Positions 3,898-61,703 of a DNA stretch of 64,000 nt are shown one piece after another. Source of the DNA: Asterias rubens (Eukaryota); the NCBI RefSeq assembly GCF_902459465.1, contig NC_047080.1, forward strand, positions 11,842,001 through 11,906,000, read 5' to 3'. The position numbers and the translations under genes were made by a program. Below the pieces are notes generated by a model. It was not told the DNA's origin. It saw nothing but the letters and a program-made list of their open reading frames with translations, and did no database searches. Each line of letters opens with the position of its first letter. The first letter of the stretch is position 1.

Positions 3898-6800
3898 CTA
3901 CTTTGGGCAGGCATAGCATATAAAGGGTGGACCTGAGAACAAAACAGGTCAACACAAGGCATGGTTTTGAAACACTATGTGGACTTAAGTCCACAGAGTA
4001 TTTTTTTAACATTTTTTTTCTTCTAAAAAGTGCACAGAACAAAAACAGTCCCACAAAGGGTATGCAATACAGTGGTTTGTGTGTATCTATCACTAAAAAA
4101 TGTGTATGACATTAAATGGTCACATAGTAGGAGGTTTAATGATAAACATTCCAGATTTTGACTCACCACTTGCAAGAACTTGGGGCATGATTCCATCCAC
4201 TAGGGTTAGAGCATGTTTGTGCATCTTCATCATTAGCTATAACAAAACAACAAACAGGATTATCAAACTAAATTCTTTATTTAGGAATGCAATTCACATC
4301 ATAATTTTTACAAACTAGAATCCATGCCTTCTTTAAAAACAAAAAACTTTTCATTTAAAACAAAATAAAATTGACAAGAAGATAATGTCCATTCTCCCCA
4401 GAGTTGACCTGTGTACAAATTATCAAACATTGATCGTTGTTGCAACTGCCATAATAGAGACATAAAATAAACTTTACCTGAACTTGTGCAAGACATGCCA
4501 TTGCCTTGGTATACAGTGATGAGAGATGGTGAGTCTTACATAGTGCCAAGGCCTGCAACAGGTGCGGGATTGCTTGAGTGTGATTGGAGGTGGATGAATG
4601 CAGCTCTGATAACTCAATTAGAGTCCTAAAGAGAATAGAAGACAAAGCTTAATCATTTACTTCTCAAATATTCCTCCCTACATCAAATTTATACACTAGT
4701 CTTGAGAACTTTATGATTTGGGTCCAATTTAAAAATTTAAATAATTTGTGTACAAATTTGCTTAGCATCAAACAAAGTCATGCTTAGCAAAACTAGGTTA
4801 CCAGACAAAATGTAATGTATGTTACTTGTGGGTATGGGAAGTCTGAGAGTAAGAGGTCTGAAACTAACGAAATCTCAAGATCCTAGACTATGGCAGTGCG
4901 TTGGCTGTGGCTATTGCTGAGGGTGTTGCTATGGGCAGCCTATACTTCAACGCATGTTACCATGGTGATCAAGCCATAGCCACTAATTTGGAAATGGCTT
5001 AAGTTTGAAGATATGAGACTGAGATGACTGTACCATACATGAAGCTCTGTGGTATACCCGTCTATTTTGTCTCTGCATTCACCGAGGATGTCATTGATGA
5101 TGTCAAAAGCAGCAGATGTCTGCCCTTGTTTCTTTAACAGAATTGCTCGTCTGAAACAAAAGGATTTAACCCTTAAAAGGTGCAACATAAATTGGTCTCA
5201 TAATTTCACACATAAAAGTTATATATCAAAATTTATATCATAATTTGTTGTTGATAATGGGAATAGAATTTAAGATAAAAGCTATCTTTGGACTTTCAAG
5301 AAAATGTATTGCCAAAACTTTCATTTTGTTAAATGAGCGCCAAGAACATGAAACATTATTTCAGAAAAGAGGGAAAATAGTTTGGCCATGGTTTGTTAGG
5401 CCTACTTGGTGAAGTAGTAAACCTCCAAGAGTAAACATTTGCCACCACAAGAGGGCGCTAATTCATTAATCCAATAATGCCAAATGAAATCATCTCCAGA
5501 ACTCACCTAAAGAGGGCGTCAGTCTCATTCAAAGGTGACAAGTTCAAAATGGCTTGTTCAGCTTGAGGCCATTTCCCTTGTAGTATGGCTTTGTCAAATA
5601 ACAACTTCTGTTCACATTCCATCCACAACTGGGCAGACAAAAAAAAAAACCAAGGAGGATTATAAAAAAAGAAACAATTCATAGAATCAAAGAAGAAAAC
5701 AAATAATAGAATCAGTTATAAAATAAATGAAACAAAATATGACAAATGAAGTAAAACATTTTATCTGAACACAGTTTATTTCCTTACCTTTGCATGTCTT
5801 GAGAGGAATGGAAATCTGTCTTTAGCCAGCTTCAGGATGTCTTGAGCAGCAGCATACATTCCTTGTTCAGCATGGAGACGAGCTTGGTTATACATAGCAA
5901 GACAAATAACTTCGCTGTCTTTAGTGATCAAGCAGTTATTAGACGCTCCACCGGGGAGATCTTGATGACTGAGATGAAGAAGTAGCTGGTCACAGTGGGA
6001 GGACATTGTCCTTCGTTAAAGAAAAAAAGAACGACAAATGAGGAATGGTTAGTTACAGATCGAGAGATCTCTTATAGAATGAATAGCTTCCCAACCAAGA
6101 AGCTGCCAGGCCTGATCTCACTGAGACAACAAAGGTGGTTGCCTCCATGCCCCCTGGCCGTTGCCTCAGTGTCCTTCAAATGCTCCAGTAGAAACTTATA
6201 ACTTCCTCACAGGGTGCCTTTTATCGAGGAGAAAATGCCTTGGTGCCCTTGCCCTTTCCAAAAACCTCGCATACAGGCCTGATCTGCAATTGCTTTTAAT
6301 GTTTTATTTTAATTTATTTTATAACACGTCCAACACTAATAACAGTATCACTAGGAAACAAAAAGAAAAATGTTCAGTTTCAGATGTGGGAGGAAAGCCC
6401 AAAGTAAAAAACACAAGCATTCAGGTAGGGACTGAAACCCAATCCAAAATGCAAGGCTCTGGTCTGAGGTGGGATTTGAACCAGGGGTCCACAGAGGTGA
6501 AAGGCAAGGAAAGAAAACACTGAGCCAACCTGGGGCCGATTTCACAAAGATCTAAGATTGATCGTAACTGCAAATCAATCGTAGTTGCTATGAAAATGGT
6601 GATGTCACAATACAAATTACTATGGTGATACTGAAAAATTGTCTTGCGATGAATTTTATTGCTTTGTGAAATCGGCCCCTGATCCTCTAGTTGATCTCTA
6701 TTAGCAAGACGCTTTATTTTCTCAAATGCAAAGCTTTTAATTAGCAGGAAAAGGGTTGGACCGTAGTCAGATTCCTGGTTTATGATGACACAGGCCTGGG

Positions 6801-9800
6801 ATTAGACAGCCTCTGTTACCCCTTGTCTCGACCTTGGAGCTCGTTCAAAAGTTTCCCATAGACTTCAACATTCTGCAACGAAACTGCCCTTTGCAAACTA
6901 AAAATGGCCTTGCCCTCGCTAAGATGAAATTCCTGGTTTATGTCATGAGTGCTCACTCACCTGTGTCCGTACATCTGCCAGAGGGCACTTTGCTGAGCCA
7001 GACTGGTTTGAACCAGTTGTGGCTGGTTGTGTTTGCAGTTCAGGACATCACTTTTAGTCAGGTATTCAAAGACACTAAAAGGAAAGAAGGGTGAAGAGGT
7101 TTATCTTTACTTTGTGATGTTTGTGGACAAAGGAAAGGTGTCATTCCAAACAGGGTCCAATTTCATGGCTCTGCAGAGTTCTGTGATTTAGGGCCCAACA
7201 AAATTTGATCAGGCAACTGGCACAAGTGCTGAAAAAGTCAGGTTGTGAAATGCAATAGAAAGGTGTATTATTACATGCTTTTAGGGTGCCTAAAGTGTAG
7301 AATTCTGTGGCACCATGATTTGGGGTCCGATATACTATACATGTAAATTACCTGGCAGGATCGACAGAGCTGAGACCTTTGTGTTGAGAAAAATGCTGAA
7401 TACCCAGAGATGTCAGATACTGTTGGAAATACAAACAAATTGAGATCATTCGCGATTAATTCATTGCTTAACACAAAAATATGTCTTGAGTTAGACTTGA
7501 TTTCAAGTCTGAGATCACAATTTTTCCTCATCATCAGCCAGGCAAAACACACCACCAGATTAGCTATCACACACCCCAACTAGCAATAAGTAAATGGCGG
7601 AATTTAATCTAGTCATGAATTTACAGGTGCCAAGCTAAAGTCAGAGGCCCCGGACCTGCAGTCCAGTGTGATTTTTCGAGCCTTACAAATCATCTCTCGT
7701 TTCCCTTTACTTACCGGCAGATTCAAAGCATCTGAACGTAAGATGGAGCGATCTAGAAGATGAGAAACATCCTCCCCTTTCATCTTTTGAAGTCTGTATA
7801 ACCAACTCTGCAAAGATAAGGTTTACATCATTAAGATTTACTCATGTTCAACCTGGTTTTTCTAAACAGACCTGTGCTTGCTAATTGAACAGAAACATAT
7901 ACAGGAAATGTACAGAGAAGACAAAAAAGAAACTTTCAGTTTTAGATGTTTGAGGAAAACCCGAGAAATTATTGCAAAGAAAACCCACACAATCGCCTAA
8001 GCTTGGATGCAAGTACATGTACTTACCAGTGCATGTTGAAGGCAGATATTGTCGTTACTCTCATGTGCAATCCGGATTGCTTCTTTCAGCGCTAACAACG
8101 CTTCCTCCCTTTAAGAAGAAAAACAATCTCAACATTTCCAAAACAAGTTTATGGAAATAACCAATCTTTCAAGATGACAACAGCTGAACCATTCGTATAA
8201 TTGGACAATACTGAAAGTAAAATCAACTCTAGCCTTAACATCTGCTGTTACACTTTGAGGCTCATGAATAACGCCAGATAGCTTTCAAACAGATGCTGCC
8301 AGATGTTCCTTTGGCCTTGCATTCATTTCAAAAGGAGATTTGCAGTCAATTCAGTGAATTCACTTGTACATGTACATATATATATGCAAGCTGAAAAACT
8401 ACATCACCTTGGACCAATCATAACACAGATATGGAAAGCTCACTGCCATTTCTGCAATGAAATAATTGTATCCAATGAAATCATTGGGCCTGTTAGACCA
8501 GTGCCTGTCACCAGACTAAATCCACTCTTACCTGTGACCAAAAGTGCAGTGTAGACCTGCCAGATTGAGGGCAGCATAGCGGAAGCTTCTACTAGTTCCT
8601 TCATCTCTATTGCTGTTTGTATCATTGGTTTTGGGCAACAGACGATCAAAGTAACTATGGAGACTGCGTGTAGCACCACAGAACTCACTCAACCGCAGAG
8701 AGTTTAAATAGGAGAGAAAATGCTGTGGATTTTGAAGAGAATTAGGCAGTAACTTAGTTTACACTTTTAAAAGTAGTACATTATAAGGTTCAGCTTTAAA
8801 AACAAGAAATGTGTAATGAATACATGTGTAGTGTCATTTCCGTGATTATATTTATCTTCAGAAACAAAACCCAAAAACAAAATTGAAATATAACACTCAA
8901 AAACATAATATAAGAACTAACTGTTTCCGGCAGATCAGGGTTAGTCTCTTTTAAAGCCGTTATCTCATATTGTAGCCTGCTTGGACTAAGAGCCCCTGGC
9001 TCTTCGTTTTGAAGTAGACGAGCCTGCTGTGCAATGAACACCTCTGCCTGCTGGTGTGTGAAGGTTTGTTCTGATGGCAGGTGCAATGTACCCACCCTGG
9101 AGAAAGAGACATGAAAATAAGAGTTAACTCTGTTTAAAATCTTTATTCCTTCTTCTGGCCATTGTAAAGTTCCAATACAAATTTATATTTTCCTCATACT
9201 TCTTCTTCTTCCTATATAAGTACAAGCCTCATAGATTACCCCTTACCAGAGGAAAATTCCTGTGCCCCTTCAAGGTCAAAGTTCAAGGTATGCTAGACTA
9301 TGTAAGTCTTACTGGTATTCAACCATTTGGACATTAAAGTTTGTGATTTTGTTTCCTTCAGATTTCCAGAAAATCATATTCTTTCTTTCATAGTTATCTC
9401 GCAACTCCGACGACCAATCGACCTCAAATTTTCACAGGTTTGTTATTTTATGCATATGTTGAGATACAGCAAATGAGAAGACTGGTCTTTGACAATTACC
9501 AATAGTGTCCATTGGCTTTAAGTCTTGCATAGTCTATACTCAACAATCAACATTAGTGTAATGAAGTGACTGCATACCTTTTTGTTTGTCGATTTGCAGG
9601 TCTGGTCCTTTCTAACTCCTCGGTAGTCATTGTTCCTCCATCGTCCACTACACTGATGTCCATCATGGCTTTGCTTCTCTCATCTTCGGTCAAGTGTCCA
9701 TCCAGACCACTAAGGTATACCTTGAGACTTTTAAACAAACTGGACACCTGGTCAAAGGAGAGTTTGTCATAGGAGAGCACCATACGCCGAATGAAAATAC

Positions 9801-11333
9801 CTGTCCAGAAAGCAACAACATTTTTATTAAATCATAAATCCTTACAATTTGTTAAATCAATGATGATAGTGGAATCTGAGATGCATAAAAAAACTTGCAG
9901 CAACAACTACTTATCATTAACGGTTGTTGGTACGAAAGTCATTGTCTTTTTGCCTTGTACACTGCCCCACTGTGATTTGTAATTGTGCGCCTGTAAAGAC
10001 GTGGTTACAGTGTTTAATTCTTATTCCTTGAATGTGTGTTGACATCTGTAACCCTGTTTCTTTTATAGACGAACGCATAATTAACTTCTGATTGGAATTG
10101 GTTGGAACGATTAAACAGAAGTCACTAAATAACGGTTTAGGAAAGTAAATGTAAGTTATGCACAACTCTAATTTTATTATTGATCTCATAATCCTTGTGG
10201 ACTATAACTACTCCTAGAACTATTTTCGGTTACGTCCGGCTATCGTCTCCGGTGGGAGAGTTCTAGGAGTAGCCTTTAACTAGATCTCATAATTATCCTT
10301 ACCAAGCACACTGTGTCGATGGACAGGTGATTGACCATTATTACTATCAAGTAGTTTATCCAGAGATTGGATAAAATCAGCCAGTGCAGAAAGTCCTGAA
10401 GTGTTGATAGAACTCAACCTGGTAGAGTAAAAAATGTAGATTAAGTTTTAAAATGTTGTTTCTTCACATACATGAAAATAGTGTGTTATTGATTTGGGGT
10501 TCAACTACTTCTATAAACTATACGGAGCCTTATATTTATAATATATAGTTTCTAGAAGTAGAGTTCAACAAAGAAATATTGACAAGAGTGGGATTTGAAT
10601 GAGGATTTGAATTATTTGTTTTTGCTGTTGAACAAATGCAAACTTACATTTCTATCAAATCTTTGCTCAGTTCTTCATCGATTTCCTTCACTCCCATCAG
10701 CAGATCTTGAAATTCCATATCAGAGCTCTGAAGTAAAATCAATGAAATATTAAGTGTAATTTAATAATAAACCTAATGTCGGTCAAAATTGTGAATCGAA
10801 ACACTCAACTCAATCACATTCAAAAACAAATTTCAAAATGGAAGTAATGCCTATTATTATTATTAAAAGTAAGATCCTGAAAATGAACAATATATAAAGT
10901 TTATATTATTATTAAAAGTATTAAACATGATAAAACATACCATGAATCATGATTAATTATTAATACATAATTGTGAAGAGAGGCTTACCTGGATCCATTT
11001 TAACATCGAGAGTGCGAAATTTCGGCTGACCATAACACTCCAGCCTGTTGCAGCAGTTGCACCCGGTCTTACACTACTTGCACTGAGCTCACCTCCACCC
11101 TCAACCGGTGATTCCTTCGCATCCGACCCACCAGTTGAAGCTGCCGGCCACGGTGCAAATGACTCCTCGTCCGTACCCGTATTTTGCCCCGATCCGGTCA
11201 CCAAGACCGGTGACATTGCAACAGGACATTTCTCGTTAAACTCCTTCTCAGCAAACACAGTAACTAAGACAGCAAGGGACACTTTATGAGGTGTGACCCA
11301 TTCTTTCCCTGAGCCAACATGAGACGGATTCAT
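3898..11333 (-). CDS. ANAPC5: Anaphase-promoting complex subunit 5; 15 clean coding exons plus a doubtful 16th with an early stop
   Basis: Exons with GT-AG junctions and consistent phases: 11333-10989, 10727-10648, 10418-10303, 9800-9578, 9096-8922, 8722-8532, 8108-8027, 7807-7715, 7419-7352, 7074-6961, 6010-5788, 5628-5507, 5150-5034, 4625-4478, 4236-4167 (2167 nt), then probably 3932-3898 (stop). Translated motifs match vertebrate APC5: KEWVTPHKV, RMVLSYDKLSF, QAEVFIAQQARLLQNEE, HFLSYLNSLR, SFRYAALNLAGLHCTFGH, ALKEAIRIAHESNDNICLQHAL, LHAEQGMYAAA, HLLQALAL. The ORF-track start at 11357 is GTG; the first ATG is 11333. The 3' end is uncertain (see findings). Confidence 0.93.
4895..4985. repeat. 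Dispersed repeat fragment, also at about 15820-15915
   Basis: Shared ttggctgtggct.ttgc..agggtgttg.ta.gggca.cct and catggtgatcaagcc. Confidence 0.55.
6345..6527 (-). mobile_element. tRNA-derived SINE
   Basis: Minus strand: A-box-like TGGCTCAGTG and B-box GGTTCAAATCC, followed by non-tRNA body; no complete cloverleaf. Confidence 0.55.
6532..6679. mobile_element. Short MITE with 18-bp perfect TIRs
   Basis: ggggccgatttcacaaag ... ctttgtgaaatcggcccc. Related interior sequence at about 22315-22440. Confidence 0.75.
10208..10272. repeat. 65-bp foldback element (ctcctagaact family)
   Basis: Perfect 14-bp inverted ends ctactcctagaact / agttctaggagtag, with internal gctatcgtctcc. Confidence 0.75.
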
Positions 11334-18276: not shown

Positions 18277-19720
18277 AATAAGTGGCTCGTCAATTAGGAC
18301 TTCAGGAGTAACAGGTGTTTCCATATGGATCCCAGATTGATCTTAAGTTGGATTTATTTTAATGATTCAGAAAGAGTTGCTTATTAGTTGCAGTTTTTAC
18401 TTTAACTCTGGACTTTCTGAATCCATTAGAATGCACAGCAGATGTTGTAGTCCACACCATGGGTGGAATTGCATCAGATGTATTGGTCTCGTTGCCATGG
18501 TCATGGTCTCCCTGAACCAAATATACCATGTTGTCTGAAGTGCACTTTACAGTCGGGTGATTTGTCACAATTTTTACTGATTGAAGGAACTTGTACAATC
18601 TCCCTCTTCATTCTTAGACAATAAATCAATTAAGAGAAGAAAGATGATAATTAATGGGAAGAGAGATGTAGCCCTAATGTGAAAGCCCTCCAAGTTTTCC
18701 AATTGTGGTGATAGAGAGTCCGTTATTGTCTCAAATGTGACACCCTAGGAAATCAGGGATTTTACCCCAACAGACTAAATGGTACAACCCCATTTCAAGA
18801 TTACAATAGCAGTTTTGAACCATCACACTCCTGGCTTTATGACTTTCTTTCTTGAATATCAAGTCCATCTAATGCTGGTTTGATAGTTTAGGATGGTTAG
18901 CTTTATTGAAAACAACGACCAATCATAGCTGTTCTAAAGATCCATAGGTTTTTCATGATTGACTGACCAATGATTGGAGGTGAGGCATCAGAGATTTAAT
19001 CTTTGGGGGACCTCATTGGATAGTTCAACATTATTTAAATAAAATCCTTGAAGGATTGAAAATGCTTTCAGTTATAGATGGCATTCCTGTTTCTGATTTT
19101 TTAATTATTTGTTTTAGTGAGAGTTGGTACATAAAACATTTATTGGACAAACCAACAAAATTTATTTTTGACAACTTCCATGTGTCAAGTGAATCGGGGT
19201 CTAGATTTTGACAGCAAATTCAGGTATCTCGGGGTGATTTCCTGTTTTTTCTTCTCTTTATTAAAAAAGTTTCTGGTGTGAGACTTTGCCCAGTCAAGGT
19301 TGCCGATCCAATTTTGTTATTGATTACTTTCGTTAAAAAACAAACATGGTGTGGGTTCATGTTGGTCTGACCTACATGTCAAAACAGCCTAACTTAAAAA
19401 AAATGGTTCTTATATAAGATCATTTCTGAGTAAATTTTTGGATTATTTTCCCATTTCAAAGCTTAAATATATACTACGTATGGATTTGAATGTAACATGT
19501 CCTATCTCGGGCTCTTATACACTTTAATCCTGTTTTATGGCGAAACAGCTATACATACTTGCTTTTCTCAAAATGTATTTTTTTTTAAGTTGGACTGTTT
19601 TGTCATGGAAGGGTCAAGTTGTCAAAAACATGTTTTTCATATTGTGTAATGAATTTGATTTATTTGTTGATTCTATAACTTTACTATTCAGTGGCTTCGG
19701 TGAACAATGAAGCCCCGTCA

Positions 19721-19852: not shown

Positions 19853-20520
19853 TAAATGTCATTCTTTTTAGTGTAGCTTATCTTGTAAGTTCATTTCCAA
19901 ATGTGAACTGTAGATTGAAGAGATCTTTTTTGCACAAACATTGGTGCTAAGATGTGAAAGAGTGGCTCGTGTTTGGTTTGAGATAGTGTCGTGAAATACA
20001 TGTAGCGTAGAAAAAACAAAAATGTGTTTGTAATATAAACTCACTTTAAATTGGGGCTTCCAGGTATGGCTGATCTTAAATCCATACGGTTTATTCAAAT
20101 GAATTTTATGACGGTATAGGTAACGTTTTATGAGGGGACACAGTTCTTTTTGAATGAGAATATCAATATTGGATTGTGCAAATTGTATCGTGAAAATGTT
20201 ATGTAAACATTTTACACTTATTGTAACTTGACTTGAATGTACTCGGAATGAGTTTTCCGTTTTCATGAAGTAGTGTTTGATTACCACGACCATGTAGTTG
20301 AATGTTGTAGGTTCGATTCCTACTCAAGTCATTTCTGCTTGATAGCTTGATAATGAAAACAGCTGACTCATCAGTCCCAGATTAGGCTTTAGTCAAGGTG
20401 TACACAGCACCTTGAGATGTCGGGCGCGACCCATCACGCATGAAAAAAGACCAGCAAATTACTTATAAATGGCTTGAAGTTTCAACTGAGATGAAGCTCC
20501 ATGGTGTATCCACCTATTTT

Positions 20521-20940
20521 GAAATGGTTTGAAGATTAAACATATAAGACTGAGATGACTGTACCCCATAGAGTTATATGTAAGAACTAGAGGGCGCACG
20601 AGTGATGCTTCGTGCACAAACGCCACGGGACCGCAAGATGACAAGCGCGGCATTCTGCACGCGCGTTGAATATGAAATACACGTTTGAGGTTTTTTTATT
20701 GAACGCTCACGCGATGCTGTTTGTTCAACTTACAAAATGGCCGCACAAACACACACTGTGAGATGCCAGTTTTGTCAACTTAGAAAATAGCCGCCTGCGC
20801 GCATGCCGGAGCGCGTATATAGGCCAGTGCGCCCTCTAGTTCTTATATATAACTCTATGCTGCACCCAGTACATGGAGCTCCTTGGTGTACCCTTCTATT
20901 TTGTCTCTGCATTTACTGAGGATGTCATTGATGATATCAA
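20521..20940 (-). pseudogene. Duplicated fragment of ANAPC5 exon 13 plus adjacent intron, split by a MITE
   Basis: 20521-20566 and 20868-20940 align to 4991-5108, about 85% identity by eye in the exonic part. The copy translates FDIINDILSKCRDKIEGYTKELHV versus ANAPC5 FDIINDILGECRDKIDGYTTELHV. Confidence 0.85.
20567..20859. mobile_element. hAT-type MITE, 293 bp
   Basis: 33-bp TIRs (catagagttatatgtaagaactagagggcgcac; one mismatch) and an 8-bp TSD, ctgtaccc (20559-20566) / ctgcaccc (20860-20867). Confidence 0.85.
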
Positions 20941-23166
20941 ATACGGCAGTCGGCGCCGGTCTTTTCTCGTGCATGATATCTGGGGTGCCGTGTGCACCTT
21001 GACTAAAGACTGGTCCCAGATAAGCTCAGGGTCACAGTGGCTTATTAAACAAGAGAACAGTGGTTTTACTTCTGTCCAATTCAATTGTGGAGTTTTGATG
21101 GTGAAGGGGCAAGTTAAATTTAATTATGTTTTTCAAAAGCTGACAGTAGAACAAAGTTGTGCCATGTTTAATTATGTAACAAAATAATGAAACATCAAGT
21201 GAATCTGATGGGGGTAATTTTTAAATAATTTGTGGTTGAACAAAGAAATTTACGTTTATCTTATTTTCATGAGACATTTTGGGTTTTTAGGATGTGCCAA
21301 ACCATTTTTATGGATCAGAGTGTTTTATTTGTAAGCTTGGCAAAACTGTCAGCAGTGCAAACCATTTCCTGTTTGTAGATAATTTGTCAAACTTATTTAC
21401 TTTGTTTGTCCTTCCTAGGAGGCCTAGTAAAAAAACTGATTTGTTTTACCTTGCCACAAGCAACAGTCTTTGTTAGAAGACGTGCGTCAAAGAAAGCAAA
21501 AGTTGCAATGAAGTTTTGTTTGTTGAGACAAATTTATTTTTGTATGTTTATTACAACTATCCAATAACCGTTCTCAATTATTTTCTTAGTATACACAAAA
21601 TACTTGAATCAAGTCTTTTTTTGTCTTATGGCCCAAAGAAAACGTTGGCTTGGTTATTTGTTCAAATTCCTAGGGTAGAAAACCTCTAGACAATCTGGCT
21701 TTGTTATTAAAAATATTGTTTTTTATTTGATTGACAATCTGTAAAAACCCGAGTATGCTAGAAGTACTCTCGTGTAAAGTAAGTATTATTGTTAGTTGCA
21801 AAAAAAAGCTTCTAGTTTGCTTGTTTTTATTAATTGTGATTTAAGCCTAAGGCGATGTTTAAGAAGTTGTGTCAGAATTTTGTCAAAGTCTTGAGAGGAA
21901 AGTGTAAAATTACTTTTGTCTTGGTAATTAGTAAAATTCTTAAGAAATAAAAGTAAAAGCTCGGAAAGCTAGAGTATTTAAAGCATTTAGTAAAAAAAAC
22001 ACTTATTTAAACAGTACAAGCATGCTTGCATACATTTATGTCATTTCATTTATTTCTTTTTAATGTTCATTTGATTTAAAACTTTTGTACATGTATTCAA
22101 ATAATTACAGTAAACAATTTTCTTTTTTTTTTAAAGGAAAAAATAAACTGCCTTCCTTTTCTTAGCACAGCAAGTAGCACTGTGACGAGAGTTACGAGTA
22201 TAAGATTTACTTGTGTATGAGGGTATTGTAATAAATATTACCGGTATTTAAATACGGCAAGTCCCCAAAAACCTATAAGGATGCTTATCACATTGAGGAG
22301 ACGCAAGCCAGGGTTCGATCTTAAGATGTGAATCGATCTTGATTGCAAAGCAAAGTGATGTCACAATACAAATCACTATGGTAATACTGACAACACATCC
22401 TAAAATGAGTGATCTTAGCGTTTTGTTAAATCAAGTCCAGGATCTCCTGATGCACTAGGTAATGTTTTCATAAAGCCTGTAAGCACACAAACGTGCAAAG
22501 CACAGACGAATCTTGCTTAGCAGAAACTTGGATTTTAACAATTTTAATCTGTTCAAGATCTTATACTTGGGTAGCTAAACTGTCCACAATAATGAGCCAT
22601 TGCTCAAATTAATTTGTATGATACATATAGTCTCTACTGATGTAAAGACTGTATTATATTTTCATCAATTTCTCTCAGCTATTCTGTGTCAAGGGTTCAT
22701 AATCTACTTGAATAATAGCTTCTTGCTTTGCATTTTGCTGGTAAACTTCTGCAACACAAAAGGTGCTTGAAAATATGACCCTGTATGTGCACTTCAAATC
22801 CCTTTTGTAAAAATCTCTTTTAAAATCATTTATTTACCTCACTGTTTATGTTTTGTGTCTAGGAAAAACACTTTGAATAAGCATTCTAAATAACCGCTTA
22901 AATTCCATTAGTAGTAGCTGTGTACTGGCTCTAAGCATTTCAACAAAAAACTTGTCACTGAACTATTCAGTTTTTGTAAAAAAAAATATTAAAAAAATAG
23001 AACTATTAAAAAAATCATAAACATAACATGCATTGTTGCCATGTAAATACTGAATAAAACAGTGTTAAAAAAAAGCCTTTGATGTAGTTATGAAGTCTTG
23101 TGGTATTTTATTGTAGATTCCACTTCTAACTGAATGGCAGGGCTATGTTGGAATGGCAGGGGGTCG

Positions 23167-26100: not shown

Positions 26101-28934
26101 TGCATTGTAATCCACTGATACGTATGTGTGCTCATTCACCAGCTCCTGCAACACAAATAAGTTTAAAAGACACTGGACACCTTTGGTAATTGTCAAAGAC
26201 CAGTCTTCTCACTTTGTGTTTCTCAACATATGCACAAAATAAAAACCTGTGAAAATTTTGAACTCAATTGGTTGTTGAAGTTGCGAGATAATAATGGAAT
26301 ACACACCCCTGTTAACCGTAGTTGTGTGCTTTCAGATGCTTGATTTCGGCCGACCTGATAATCTAATTCTGAGGTCTCGAAAATCAAATTTGTGGAAAAT
26401 CCCTTCTTTATCGTAAACTATTTTACTTCAGAGGGAGCCGTTTCTCACAATACTTTATACTATCAACAGCTCTCCATTGCTTGTTACCAAGTAAGTTTTT
26501 ATGCTAACAATTATTTCTAGTAATTACCAATAGTGTCCACTGCCTTTAAGGGTGTGACGTTATTGTGGAATGTGCTATATAAGACTTAGTTGTTATTATT
26601 ATTTTTATTTAGAAGCAATTCAATGACACGCCAATTTAAAATATGCTAACCTTTTTCTGCTAAGCAAAATGTCCTGTGCTAAGCAGATTTAGATTATGTT
26701 GAACAAATATTCCTTACCTCGGCTCTACTCAAATTAATAGCAGCAAAATGTGCTGGATATTTCAGTTGCAGCAACTTATGCATGAATGTTGCTGAATGCA
26801 GACCACCGATGTTGACTCGTCGACTATGTGTGACGTCTATTTTGCCTTGAATTATTGGAAGAATATGGGTAGTCTGGTAACCAGAGGAGAGTACCAGACC
26901 ATCAGAGGTTCCTGTAATCAAATGAGAGTTGTGGTAATAGTGGTCATCTTATTAAGCCTATAATTCTGTGACGCTCAACGCACTCAACAATATAAAAAAG
27001 TGAAAAGCAGAAATACTAACTTTGTATATAAAAAAGAGCAACACATAATTATACATTTTTTCAACATTACCTGAGCTCGGGAAGTTTTGATAGAAGCTGA
27101 ATAGACTAGCCACACCAAAAGCCAGTTTAGGAACATGGTAGCACTCAAACAAAAGCTCCGACATCACTGAAAAAGAAAATATTATCATAATTATGTCCTC
27201 AAATGATTCAACATTTTCATTTTCTTTGGATACCTGCTAAGAATAACTGAACATGGAATGTTTTTTGTTTTTGGCTGGTAACCTGTTTTTACTAAGCAAG
27301 ATGTTCATGTGCTTAACAAGTTTTTGTGCTTACAGGCTTTATGAAACTTGGCCCTGATTGACTTACACTGCCGGCAGTAACTCGGATTACAAACTGTCTC
27401 TGTCAGTACTAGAGGATGTGTGACAGCGCCCTCTGTGTCCAGACCAAGATGCGAAAAGATGTGATCAAATACAAGCTCTTGTGAGTCGTAATTTGTGACC
27501 ACATCACGGTCGAACTGTGTCTTCAGCAACCAGCGTATCGTCTCCACATTAGGAATGTCGTTTCCGATCTGAGACTCATAGTCTTTCTTGCCTCGTTGGC
27601 GAGCGATTAAGCTACGGAAGACAAGACGGGGGGAAGGATCACTGGCCCAGCCCACTCTGCAGTAACAAGATCCTTCAGGCAAATATAAAAAGAAGACCAC
27701 AATTCAATAATAAACAGCATACATAGGAAAACTTTAACTCTAATATTAAACATGGTGGTTCGTAATAGCTTTATAAAATTGGGCCCAGCACAGTGAAACG
27801 AAGACAGGGAGTCTAACTTTGGCTAAGCTGTGTACTGTTTGATTCAACAACCACGACAGCACTGTCTCCTCATCAGTCAGAGCCTCCTGTTTCATAATCC
27901 TAGAACTATGAGGTTCGTTTCCGCTACTCTAATAACTATGAGGTTCCTTCCTCTATTGTTGTCAATTACTCCTAGAAGTATGGGGTACCTTCTTGGAGAC
28001 GATAGCGAAACGAACCTCATAGTTCTAGGAGTAGCAGAACGAACCTCACAATTCTAAGAGTTTGGAGACGATAGCGGAGCGTACCTCATAGTTCTAGGAG
28101 GTACCTGTCTCATTAGTTGCGATAACGTAACCCTCCTCCTCCGGGAGGAGGGTTACGTTGGGAGGAGGGTTACGTTAGAGGAGGGTTACGTTATCGCAAC
28201 TACTGTTCATATAATACTTACCGTTATCAATAATGAGTGGAGTGTCACTCCCTCTAATAGCTTCCGGGTATTTATGATATTTATCAGGAGTGCGGTTAAG
28301 ATGACCATCTCGGAACCTGAAGGTATCACTTGATTCTGCAACATGATTTATCAAAATTAAATAACTATATAAGAACAAAGGACTGGTTCGTTATTCGGAA
28401 AAGTTTCCGTATAGCGCCACCACTTTTTCATTCGATATAAATAATATAATAGTATCTAATTTACCTCAATGAGATATCCCTTTTTGTAAAAATGAGTGAA
28501 AAAGTGGTGGCGACATACAGAAAGTTATCCCATTTCAGTTGTTCTTCCACCCAGTACTATGAGGCAGCCGTACTTATGATGATGATTAATTCAAGTTTTG
28601 GGATTGAGAAAACAGACTGGAAAGTGGAAGTTCTTTCGATTGATCTTCTTCAGTGCAAATTGTATGTTATTTAGTTAGGCCATGGTTAGGCCATGGAGCG
28701 GAGGTAGTAGTAGACTTCCCTCCGTGGTTAGGCCGAATAACATCAATATCATGCTTGGACCATGCTTGGGCTGGCTAGAGACACCGGGGGAGGAGGAGGG
28801 GGGGGGGGGAAGGGGGGACAGAATCTGGGATCTCCCGTGGTCACACAACACACAGGGTGGCAAACAAAAGACAAGGTCGAAAAGGGAAAAGAGTTCTTCC
28901 CCAAGTCAATACCTGAATATTCTTCAGCTGCCAT
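23167..28934 (-). CDS. ACTR5: Actin-related protein 5 (INO80 complex subunit), 13 coding exons, 591 aa
   Basis: Exons 28934-28913, 28335-28222, 27672-27367, 27166-27071, 26911-26718, 26145-26029, 25814-25719, 25301-25221, 25032-24868, 24733-24639, 24222-24018, 23548-23437, 23339-23167 (1776 nt, phases consistent). Motifs: [103 protein letters not shown]. The 22-nt first coding exon is inferred from phase and is less certain. Confidence 0.95.
25440..25500 (-). mobile_element. Degenerate tRNA-like SINE head in an ACTR5 intron
   Basis: Minus strand tggttcagttgttatagcgccagcatgttaatctggaggttgcaggctcaagtc, with decayed A and B boxes. Confidence 0.45.
26164..26549. mobile_element. MITE with TA-flanked TIRs (Tc1/mariner-like non-autonomous), copy 1
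   Basis: Ends taaaagacactggacac...gtgtccactgccttta. Near-full second copy at 61704-62085; partial copies near 9470-9520 and 63650-63782. Confidence 0.8.
27898..28100. repeat. Compound foldback array of the ctcctagaact family
   Basis: Several tagaactatgaggttc units facing gagacgatagc...gaacctcatagttctagga units. Confidence 0.75.
28114..28202. repeat. Palindromic element with three internal gaggagggttacgtt units
   Basis: tagttgcgataacgtaaccctcctc ... gaggagggttacgttatcgcaacta. Partial relative at 30041-30064. Confidence 0.75.
28397..28530. repeat. Inverted repeat with arms of about 34 bp (MITE-like)
   Basis: gtatagcgccaccactttttca (28409-28430) versus tgaaaaagtggtggcgacatac (28497-28518), extendable outward. 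Confidence 0.65.
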
Positions 28935-59980: not shown

Positions 59981-61703
59981 CACTTCCCATCACCCAGGAT
60001 TAATTTATCGGGTACCTGTTAGGGTAGAGATTGTTGAATGATTAGCAACCTGTGCGCCATTTTGGCTTCCGGTGCTGCATACTCCGAAGGAGTTGAGATG
60101 GTTTCAGGAAAGCATAAGACCCAATGAACAGTGCAAATAATAAGGTAAAGCACTTTTAATACAAAATTAAAAAGCACATAATAAACACTTTGCCACAAAA
60201 TAATTGCTAAAGGCCTCACATTTTGAACATCGGAGTCTTTCTTATTTTTATGTAAGATTCTTTTCTCTGTGATAACCCAGATATTTTTTACCAAAATGCC
60301 TTTGTAGCCACCAGCCTCTACTTACACTTAATTTGGGTAGTGAGAAAAGGTTATTAAGAGTTGAAGATACCAATCTCTAGTTGTGTGCCTAGAAACTGAG
60401 AAATGTGACTTGAAGCACAGGAATCTCAGTAGGGTAAGGTCTTTGTTTGAATAAAGAAACTGCTTGCATTAATCATTCCTTAAGATCAGAGGCAAAGATA
60501 TAATGGTTCTCTCAATCAGTGTAGCTGGAGGAAAAGCCTAGTGACCTACAAACATGAAATATCAAATATAATACTTCAACGTTACGCAGAGTACAGAAAA
60601 CCAACAACTGCTCAGTGACAATCTTTTAATTATTAGCTGCACGTCATCGCTTAATGAGGAGGTACGTACAGGTGACAATACTGCTGCAACTGACAATCTT
60701 ACTTTCCCTGAATCAGGAGCAGCTTGGTTTTGTTTTCTCTGAGGTATGCAAATATCCTCTTTGAATCCAAATATGGTGAAGGTTGCATAATATTGTTTGC
60801 TGCTCCCAGTATTTTTGAGGCCTGGAATTTCATCTTTGAGAGGGCAAGGCCATTTTCATTTTGCAAAGGGCAGTTCCACTGACCAGGGCAACAGATGCCT
60901 TTGCCTCCATGGCCTCTGTATTAATTCAAGGCATGATGTTGACTCACTTTGAATCAAGGTACTTGACTCACTTAGAGTCTAGGTACAGCATTGGTAATAG
61001 TAACCTTGTCCAAACCTGCTTCGTTTGTACGAGGTTGAAAAACCTCAAAAAACCATGCTTCGACCCCATGGTATCAAGTACTGTTATGTACCGTGTGCAG
61101 TACATGACTGTATCTATGCAGTTCGTCTTCCCAACGCGCTATACAGGGTGAATTCAGAGTGGGCCGTGCTATGCGTAAACAAGGCTGGACAAGGCTATGG
61201 TAATAGCAGTGGCAGTAGGTTTGAACACCGACCAGGCATGTTTACGATATGTTTTTACGATGTCCCCCTTATAAGCTCAACTACTCATGCAAGCATGTCG
61301 TGTGCATTCACGTGTTAACACCAATCAACCTCTCATTGACTACCTCATATTATATTCATTATTTCAAGCAACCGTACCGTACTGTACAGGAAATTAAATA
61401 GTACCACAAACACACACGCACTGTAAATGAACCCATGCCTTAAGCCAACATTTCCACACTACATACCAATATCGGTCGATTCAACCAATCGTCTTAATTC
61501 AGAGGTGGAATTAAACCAAGTCAAGATTGTACAGGAATTTGTTGTGAGTTTGGAAACTTTTAAAGCTCCTATTATTCCAATGTCTATTCGAAGGCTCTCA
61601 AAGTTGTCTTTAGTAGTTGCTTATTATTGCATGGAATATTGGCAGCTGACTCCACACCTCCAAGCGCCTACTATTTTAAACACAACTGGAAACATCCAGC
61701 CTT

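What the first reader, a model, noticed from the sequence alone, without database searches (positions are those of the whole stretch)
20387..21008. Pack-type transposon: inverted repeats enclosing a captured piece of the neighbouring ANAPC5 gene
Seen: inverted arms (20387-20455 and 20955-21008; 23/25 and 19/23 identity; TA at both termini) enclose sequence homologous to ANAPC5 4991-5110, 15.5 kb away. The copy includes most of exon 13, its donor and about 45 nt of intron, so capture was from DNA rather than mRNA. The exonic part still reads FDIINDILSKCRDKIEGYTKELHV versus FDIINDILGECRDKIDGYTTELHV. Known: Pack-MULE/Pack-CACTA elements capture host gene fragments in plants, often from nearby loci, and can generate small RNAs against the parent gene; such elements are much less documented in animals. 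Inference: local gap-repair capture by a TA-targeting TIR element. Read-through from UCK (+) would be antisense to ANAPC5 mRNA, and the arms would fold into a hairpin.
Basis: partly seen in the sequence, partly recalled or inferred. Interest (0 to 1): 0.75.

Follow-up and report, generated by a model that had tools for sequence, protein, structure and literature searches.

The report
Old transposon holding ANAPC5 gene fragment
A 630-base relic of a cut-and-paste jumping gene in a sea-star genome has had its interior replaced by a DNA copy of part of the ANAPC5 gene 15.8 kb away; this kind of capture is already catalogued in animals, and this copy looks old, unique and inert.

Summary
An element at 20383-21012 has inverted arms (28 nt at 25/28, plus 23 nt at 19/23). 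It is flanked by a perfect 9-bp target-site duplication, GTCCCAGAT, not by TA. Its interior is filled by a copy of ANAPC5 4977-5115: 62 nt of intron, the splice donor and 77 of the 112 exon bases, at 83-86% identity. The cargo is 1.6 tandem copies joined at a microhomology patch. It is also split by a nested 293-bp MITE (20567-20859) of a very high-copy family.

A relative about 3% diverged has the outer element and cargo but an empty site for the MITE. In whole-genome contigs the cargo has one other match, the parent. The arms have almost none at 80% identity or more.

This matches the single-copy "Pack-TIR" class of Tan et al. 2021: 370 cases in 100 animal genomes, mostly made by gap filling from nearby DNA without transposition. 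The TA-targeting reading is refuted.

The element changes as fast as its flanks. The cargo would sit in the loop of the predicted hairpin, not the stem, so a small-RNA role is unsupported.

Earlier scan notes describe TAG...CTA elements with 9-bp duplications elsewhere in this genome; this element fits that pattern. It is a new member of a known kind, of modest interest.

The parts
20374..20382 (.). Left copy of the 9-bp target-site duplication GTCCCAGAT of the outer element
   Evidence: Perfect 9/9 direct repeat abutting both termini. A 9-bp repeat plus a 12/16 or better TIR is found twice in the window, against 0.1 per shuffled window.
20383..20455 (+). Left arm of the outer element: terminus TAGGC..., TIR 20383-20411, 21-nt spacer, inner inverted repeat 20433-20455
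   Evidence: Depth is flat at single-copy level in DNA run X2.
20456..20466 (.). 11-nt filler between the left arm and the cargo, with no clear homology
   Evidence: Alignment (5/11 to parent, not significant).
20467..20521 (+). Cargo copy A: partial copy of parent 4993-5028 joined to 5043-5069, lacking the donor region. Its last 15 nt (20507-20521) also align to the start of copy B (11/15 and 12/15 to two parent sites), marking a template-switch junction.
   Evidence: (D1).
20507..20566 (+). Cargo copy B, intron part, matching parent 4977-5034 at 83%
20567..20859 (.). Nested 293-bp MITE with 33-nt TIRs (97%), CAT...ATG ends and an 8-bp duplication CTGTACCC/CTGCACCC at 20559-20566 and 20860-20867
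   Evidence: I1. Thousands of contigs pile up, with loose ends exactly at 20566 and 20859. The organism D contig joins 20563 to 20866 with one letter between, which is an empty site.
20868..20952 (+). Cargo copy B, donor (20871-20872) plus exon part (20873-20949/52), matching parent 5036-5115 at 86%. On the minus strand it reads AVFDIINDILSKCRDKIEGYTKELH.
20955..21012 (-). Right arm of the outer element: inner repeat 20955-20977, 6-nt spacer, TIR 20984-21012, terminus ...GACTG (...GACTA in organism D)
   Evidence: 21012 G>A in X17.
21013..21021 (.). Right copy of the 9-bp target-site duplication GTCCCAGAT
4977..5118 (-). Parental segment in ANAPC5: 62 nt of intron start, the donor, and the 3' 77 nt of the exon
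5039..5150 (-). Parental ANAPC5 exon, 112 nt, encoding RAILLKKQGQTSAAFDIINDILGECRDKIDGYTTELH
   Evidence: AG/GT boundaries and frame. Neighbouring exons match human ANAPC5 442-505 and 580-631.

Best explanation
A non-autonomous cut-and-paste transposon inserted about 2.1 kb downstream of the uridine-cytidine kinase stop codon, between two convergent genes. It has TAG...CT(A/G) termini, short inverted arms and a 9-bp target-site duplication. Its interior was later lost to a double-strand break or an abortive excision. The gap was refilled by repair synthesis that copied an ectopic template in cis, the exon/intron junction of ANAPC5 15.8 kb away. The polymerase slipped back once at a short microhomology, which gave 1.6 tandem copies.

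The result is a single-copy 'Pack-TIR'. It has drifted neutrally since, predates the split from a sister species, and was later hit by a high-copy MITE.

Shown: the anatomy, the DNA-level origin, single-copy status, the order of events and neutral drift. Inferred: that filling happened in place rather than before a transposition, and the transposon superfamily.
For: - **TIRs and TSD.** The TIRs plus a perfect 9-bp TSD are far beyond chance.
- **Extent of the cargo.** It fills the interior to within 11 nt of the left arm and 2-5 nt of the right arm, and homology to the parent stops there.
- **DNA-level origin.** The cargo holds intron plus donor, so it was copied from DNA or unspliced RNA.
- **Timing of the duplication.** Copies A, B and the parent are about equally distant (5-6 differences in 31), and the A-to-B junction lies in a 15-nt patch matching both parent sites. 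The duplication therefore arose at or near capture.
- **Copy number.** In whole-genome contigs only one other contig matches the cargo, and its joint reproduces the parent sequence.
- **Age.** Organism D, about 3% diverged, carries the element and cargo but lacks the nested MITE. Cargo-parent divergence (15%) is similar to arm-arm divergence (7/51, 14%).
- **Substitution pattern.** Exonic differences are 6 synonymous and 5 non-synonymous, as expected for a neutral copy and a constrained parent.
- **Literature.** Single-copy animal Pack-TIRs arise mostly by transposition-independent gap filling, 57% lie under 15 kb from the parent, and 68% have microhomology at a breakpoint (PMC8277862).
- **Element class.** A second element with TAG...CTA-type ends and a 9-bp TSD lies in this window, and earlier scan notes report the class elsewhere in the genome.
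Against: - No relative of the arms was demonstrated. The left arm has no other contig at 80% identity or more, and the right arm has only an unresolved excess of 1-2 contigs. A metagenome scan for the TIR found nothing. The element's family and superfamily are therefore unproven.
- No species was found with the element but without cargo, or with an empty site for the outer element. In-place filling cannot be separated from short-range transposition of a loaded element.
- Junction microhomology at the arm boundaries is blurred by 15% divergence.
Confidence: 0.65

Rival explanations
1. True mobile Pack-type element. The transposon acquired the ANAPC5 fragment while sitting in or beside ANAPC5, or elsewhere, and then transposed with its cargo to the present site by local hopping.
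For: The intact TIR-TSD structure brackets the loaded element. Arm-arm divergence (14%) and cargo-parent divergence (15%) are alike, so insertion and capture could be one episode. Cut-and-paste elements often reinsert nearby (established knowledge). Multicopy Pack-TIRs exist in frogs, alligators and flies.
Against: Only one copy of the cargo exists besides the parent. No trace of the arms lies near the parent. In the 2021 survey multicopy, transposed Pack-TIRs were always distal to the parent, while single-copy ones clustered in cis.
Confidence: 0.2
2. Not a transposon. A break-repair event, with templated insertion and snap-back synthesis, created both the inverted arms and the ANAPC5 filler, and the flanking 9-bp repeat is a repair microduplication.
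For: No family members of the arms were found. The cargo shows template switching.
Against: The arms have a bipartite TIR structure with TAG...CT(A/G) termini directly abutting a perfect 9-bp duplication. That signature is shared with another element in this window and with a class noted elsewhere in the genome. Snap-back products are normally adjacent and short (established knowledge).
Confidence: 0.07
3. Functional regulator. Carried in the 3' region of the kinase transcript, the cargo acts as a natural antisense or small-RNA source against ANAPC5. This concerns function and is compatible with any origin above.
For: The geometry is right: the cargo is collinear with the parent on the plus strand, ANAPC5 is on minus and the kinase on plus. 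The region is held in many probable RNA runs and in one declared metatranscriptome, at 0.46 of words. The predicted fold is strong, z = -12.
Against: The element diverges from organism D at 3.3%, against 2.9% for its flank, so there is no constraint. The ANAPC5-derived part is in the loop and is a direct duplication, not an inverted one, so the hairpin makes no double-stranded ANAPC5 RNA. Identity is 86% with at most 19 perfect exon bases. A MITE has since split it. Transcript strand and small RNAs were not tested.
Confidence: 0.05

Closest known systems
Single-copy Pack-TIRs of animals (Tan et al. 2021, Nat Commun 12:4280, PMC8277862)
   Same: Two terminal pieces of one TIR element with a TSD enclose a short non-transposon fragment. 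The fragment's unique parent lies close by on the same chromosome, the copy holds intron sequence, there are signs of template switching, the copy number is one, and it sits in a transcribed gene-flanking region.
   Different: It is older than their detection cut-off (83-86% identity against 90% or more). The arms have no known consensus family. The TSD is 9 bp, whereas 87% of their cases were hAT or Tc1/mariner. The text names no echinoderm. The cargo is itself partly duplicated and carries a nested MITE.
Pack-MULEs of plants (recalled from the literature; summarised in PMC8277862)
   Same: Gene-fragment cargo between TIRs, a 9-11-bp TSD, and possible antisense transcripts against the parent.
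   Different: No Mutator-like long TIRs or family relation were shown. It is a single copy with no evidence of mobilisation. Plant Pack-MULEs are often multicopy (36% in rice).
Internally deleted P, Ac/Ds-type elements with filler DNA from abortive gap repair (established knowledge; cited as the model in PMC8277862)
   Same: Only the termini are retained and the interior is replaced by ectopic sequence copied with template switches at microhomology, preferentially from cis-linked templates.
   Different: Here the transposase family is unknown and the event is ancient, so the break that started repair (excision or a fragile site) cannot be told.
Ssk-FB4 of Drosophila (Foldback-type Pack-TIR, PMC8277862)
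   Same: Foldback/Mutator-type elements make 9-bp TSDs. This is my recollection and an earlier scan note, not checked in the paper. On that basis a host gene piece is captured by an element of the same TSD type.
   Different: Ssk-FB4 is a young, multicopy, coding family under positive selection. This one is a single, old, non-coding relic.

Membership tests
Pack-TIR (animal TIR transposon with captured host fragment) | Both ends are terminal pieces of the same TIR transposon | tested here: inconclusive
   The ends form a bipartite inverted repeat (25/28 and 19/23) far beyond chance. No family consensus or second copy was available to confirm transposon identity.
Pack-TIR (animal TIR transposon with captured host fragment) | Target-site duplication flanking the whole unit | tested here: met
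   Perfect 9-bp GTCCCAGAT on both sides.
Pack-TIR (animal TIR transposon with captured host fragment) | Internal non-transposon sequence (100-5000 bp) with one unambiguous parental locus | tested here: met
   About 195 bp once the nested MITE is removed. There is one other matching contig in whole-genome contigs, and it equals the ANAPC5 locus.
Pack-TIR (animal TIR transposon with captured host fragment) | Not part of a larger segmental duplication, and no copy of this element's arms beside the parent | tested here: met
   No homology outside 4977-5115 / 20507-20952, and no arm-like sequence near the parent at E of 1 or less. Other repeats next to the parent were not examined.
Pack-TIR (animal TIR transposon with captured host fragment) | Copied from DNA, not a retrocopy (intron retained) | tested here: met
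   62 nt of intron and the GT donor are present.
Pack-TIR (animal TIR transposon with captured host fragment) | Survey cut-off only, not a defining feature: 90% or more identity to the parent | tested here: not met
   Identity is 83-86%, so the 2021 pipeline would have skipped it as too old.
Pack-MULE (Mutator-like) | 9-11-bp TSD | tested here: met
   9 bp. An 8-bp TSD plus one chance base cannot be excluded.
Pack-MULE (Mutator-like) | TIRs related to a Mutator-like family or autonomous partner | not testable with these tools
   No repeat library or genome-wide search of this animal was available.
Pack-MULE (Mutator-like) | Mobilised copies with the same cargo | tested here: not met
   No further copy at 80% identity or more in whole-genome contigs of run X2.
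   The flanks repeat 9 bp. A TA reading would need a pre-existing tandem repeat at the target.
MITE (the nested element 20567-20859) | Short, TIR-bounded, TSD, high copy number, orthologous empty site | tested here: met
   33-nt TIRs at 97%, an 8-bp TSD with one mismatch, thousands of contigs with sharp boundaries, and an empty site in organism D.

The most novel reading that the evidence does not exclude
The element belongs to the sea-star class of TAG...CTA transposons with 9-bp duplications (Mutator/Foldback-like). That would make it a Pack-MULE-type capture in a deuterostome, a type the 2021 survey did not find in animal reference genomes. Its plus-strand copy inside the kinase 3' region would act as a natural antisense to ANAPC5.
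Probability: 0.05. Interest if true: 0.6.

Novelty: new member of a known kind. Interest (0 to 1): 0.3.

Why it matters
It adds an echinoderm example, with a dated order of events, to the recently described animal Pack-TIR phenomenon. The order is transposon insertion, then gap filling from a cis template with one template switch, then a later MITE hit. It also shows that a 9-bp-duplication element class can be involved. It does not change the current picture: the copy is single, old, neutral and non-coding, so its value is as a worked case of repair-driven exon-fragment duplication.

Tried and rejected
- The parental exon alone against solved structures gave no ANAPC5 hit because it is too short. 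I bracketed it with the neighbouring exons instead.
- A Pfam scan of the element's two open frames found nothing.
- A scan of metagenome contigs for the 25-nt TIR found 0 hits.
- Rfam gave only sub-threshold matches and ARAGORN found no tRNA.
- An earlier-findings search for gene-capture notes was blank.
- Two independent repeat insertions facing each other: rejected, because one 9-bp duplication brackets both arms and the arms are not a repeat at 80% identity or more.
- A larger segmental duplication: rejected, because homology ends inside the arms.
- Helitron capture: rejected, because TIRs and a TSD are present.
- Retrocopy: rejected, because intron sequence is present.
- Selection on the copy's reading frame: pN/pS is 0.21, but this is what a neutral copy and a constrained parent give, and only 11 sites differ.
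- Fetching orthologous loci of more distant sea stars through the flanking genes was left out.
- Poly(A)-signal scanning was uninformative because there are too many hexamers.

Full report
**Setting.** The window comes from a sea star (earlier scan notes).
- ANAPC5 lies on the minus strand from about 4.3 to 11.1 kb. Pfam ANAPC5 hits 8531-8758 and Apc5_N hits 9556-9831. Exons at 5779-6015 and 4358-4648 match human ANAPC5 residues 442-505 and 580-631.
- A uridine-cytidine kinase gene lies on the plus strand, with PRK-family hits. Its last coding exon ends at about 18273.
- An actin-related protein gene lies on the minus strand from about 23.2 kb.
- The finding therefore sits about 2.1 kb beyond the kinase stop codon, between two convergent genes.

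**Check of the observation.**
- The arms are 20384-20411 / 20984-21011 (28 nt, 25/28) and 20433-20455 / 20955-20977 (23 nt, 19/23). The spacers between them are 21 nt on the left and 6 nt on the right.
- Inverted repeats this strong within 1.5 kb number 7 in the window and 0 in 20 dinucleotide shuffles.
- The unit is directly flanked by a perfect 9-bp direct repeat, GTCCCAGAT, at 20374-20382 and 21013-21021. Its termini are TAGGC... and ...GACTG.
- A scan for a 9-bp duplication plus a 12/16 or better TIR finds two elements in the window, against 0.1 per shuffle. The element is therefore 20383-21012 with a 9-bp target-site duplication, not a TA one.
- In a sister species the last base is A (21012 G>A), which makes the termini TAG...CTA.

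**Cargo.**
- BLAST of the region against the window gives 20870-20949 against 5036-5115 (86%, E 1e-21) and 20507-20565 against 4977-5034 (83%, E 9e-11). Both are on the same strand, and nothing else matches outside the arms.
- The parental exon is 5039-5150 on the minus strand (112 nt, AG/GT bounded, 37 codons plus one base). Together with the exon in 5506-5715 it fills the 75-residue gap between the two human-matched exons.
- The copy holds 62 nt of intron, the GT donor and 77 exon bases, so it was copied from DNA or unspliced RNA.
- A second, partial copy (A, 20467-20521) precedes the main one (B). It matches parent 4993-5028 joined to 5043-5069.
- The A-to-B junction is a 15-nt patch (20507-20521) that aligns to both parent sites, at 11/15 and 12/15.
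- Over the 31 nt that A, B and the parent share, they differ pairwise by 5-6 sites. This star-like pattern places the internal duplication at or near capture, as a template switch would.
- Filler of 11 nt on the left and 2-5 nt on the right separates the cargo from the arms.
- Exonic differences are 6 synonymous and 5 non-synonymous (pS 0.39, pN 0.084). That is what a neutral copy and a constrained parent should give.

**Nested MITE.**
- 20567-20859 has 33-nt TIRs (97%) and an 8-bp duplication, CTGTACCC/CTGCACCC.
- Laying the contigs of four public runs at 80% likeness piles thousands of contigs on exactly this interval, with loose ends at 20566 and 20859.
- A 3.2-kb contig of organism D (3-4% diverged) runs from 19900 to 21168 and joins 20563 to 20866 with one letter between. 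That is an orthologous empty site.
- The same contig carries the outer element and the cargo. The order is therefore outer element and capture first, then the species split, then the MITE.

**Copy number.**
- In the whole-genome contigs of run X2 the left arm is flat at single-copy depth (147).
- The cargo has exactly one extra contig. Its joint (20565 to 20870 with an A between) reproduces the parent sequence.
- Over 20926-21033 there is an excess equal to one or two further contigs. I could not identify them because the table was truncated.
- A 37-bp repeat at 21212-21248 was laid in the same run, so short matches are detectable. The arms are therefore not a repeat at 80% identity or more.
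- That does not exclude an old family. Cargo-parent divergence is 15% and arm-arm divergence is 14% (7/51), so sister copies would now be 15-30% apart.
- A metagenome scan for the TIR was blank.

**Age and constraint.**
- Cargo-parent divergence (about 15-17%) is roughly five times the divergence between the window and organism D (about 3-4%).
- Within the left part of the element, organism D differs at 6 of 181 sites (3.3%), against 13-14 of 483 in the flank (2.7-2.9%). There is no sign of constraint.

**Transcription.**
- The stretch is held at 0.7-0.8 of sampled words in many runs whose small contig sets suggest RNA. A declared metatranscriptome holds 0.46 of the words of 20330-20565.
- Contigs of two probable RNA runs are continuous from the kinase gene region into the element.
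- Contigs have no strand, and DNA carry-over cannot be excluded. Transcription is likely but the direction is not shown.
- The predicted fold pairs the arms and the MITE arms (z = -12). The ANAPC5-derived bases lie in the loop and are directly, not invertedly, repeated.
- The longest perfect exon match is 19 nt. The small-RNA idea therefore has no support beyond geometry.

**Comparison with what is known.**
- Tan et al. 2021 (PMC8277862) found 370 Pack-TIRs in 100 animal genomes.
- They showed that single-copy ones arise mainly by gap filling without transposition. 57% lie within 15 kb of the parent and microhomology occurs at 68% of cases. Some are transcribed with host genes, occasionally antisense to the parent.
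- They found no Pack-MULE in animal reference genomes, and the text names no echinoderm.
- The present case fits that class in every feature I could test, except that the arms' family is unknown and the copy is older than their 90% cut-off.
- Its 9-bp duplication and TAG...CTA ends match a pattern that earlier first-reader notes report repeatedly in this genome (unchecked notes). I found the same pattern once more in this window, at 61001-61197 with TSD TGGTAATAG. This supports transposon identity and hints at a Mutator/Foldback- or Merlin-type enzyme, but it does not prove it.

**Verdict.** This is a real, old, single-copy Pack-TIR-like relic, most likely made by in-place gap repair from a cis template. 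The TA-targeting and regulatory readings are not supported. It is a new member of a known kind, of modest interest.

Noticed in passing
window 20567-20859: A 293-bp MITE with CATAGAG... ends, an 8-bp TSD and an internal 26-nt direct repeat (20719-20744 and 20769-20794). It belongs to an extremely abundant family, with thousands of contigs in each of four runs, including probable RNA runs. It is absent at this site in a sister species about 3% diverged, so the family was active recently.
   Followed up: partly
window 21212-21248: A 37-bp very high-copy repeat. Summed depth is 20160 against 153 in the DNA run, with sharp loose ends on both sides. Its nature is unknown.
   Followed up: no
window 61001-61197: A 197-bp element with ends TAACCTTGTCC... 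and ...GGACAAGGCTA and a perfect 9-bp TSD, TGGTAATAG. It is a second member of the TAG...CTA / 9-bp class in this window.
   Followed up: partly
window 19375-19607: A 233-bp element-like inverted repeat with 29-nt arms at 90% and CATG ends, about 0.8 kb upstream of the finding.
   Followed up: no
window 20230-20331: A weak tRNA-like match (20.9 bits, below the Rfam threshold, with a GGTTCGATTCC T-arm motif). ARAGORN was negative. It may be a SINE relic just left of the element.
   Followed up: partly
window 20926-21033: An unexplained excess of about one or two single-copy-depth contigs over the right arm in whole-genome contigs. The left arm shows none.
   Followed up: no
other pieces of this genome (notes s1-175582, s1-150363, s1-151312): Earlier first-reader notes list tandem copies of exon 3' ends with intact donors. 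The cargo here is also an exon 3' end, donor and intron start in 1.6 tandem copies, so a common template-switch process at exon-intron junctions is conceivable.
   Followed up: no
window 27890-28210: A dense cluster of short inverted repeats (27-41 nt, 80-96%) near the 5' part of the actin-related protein gene.
   Followed up: no
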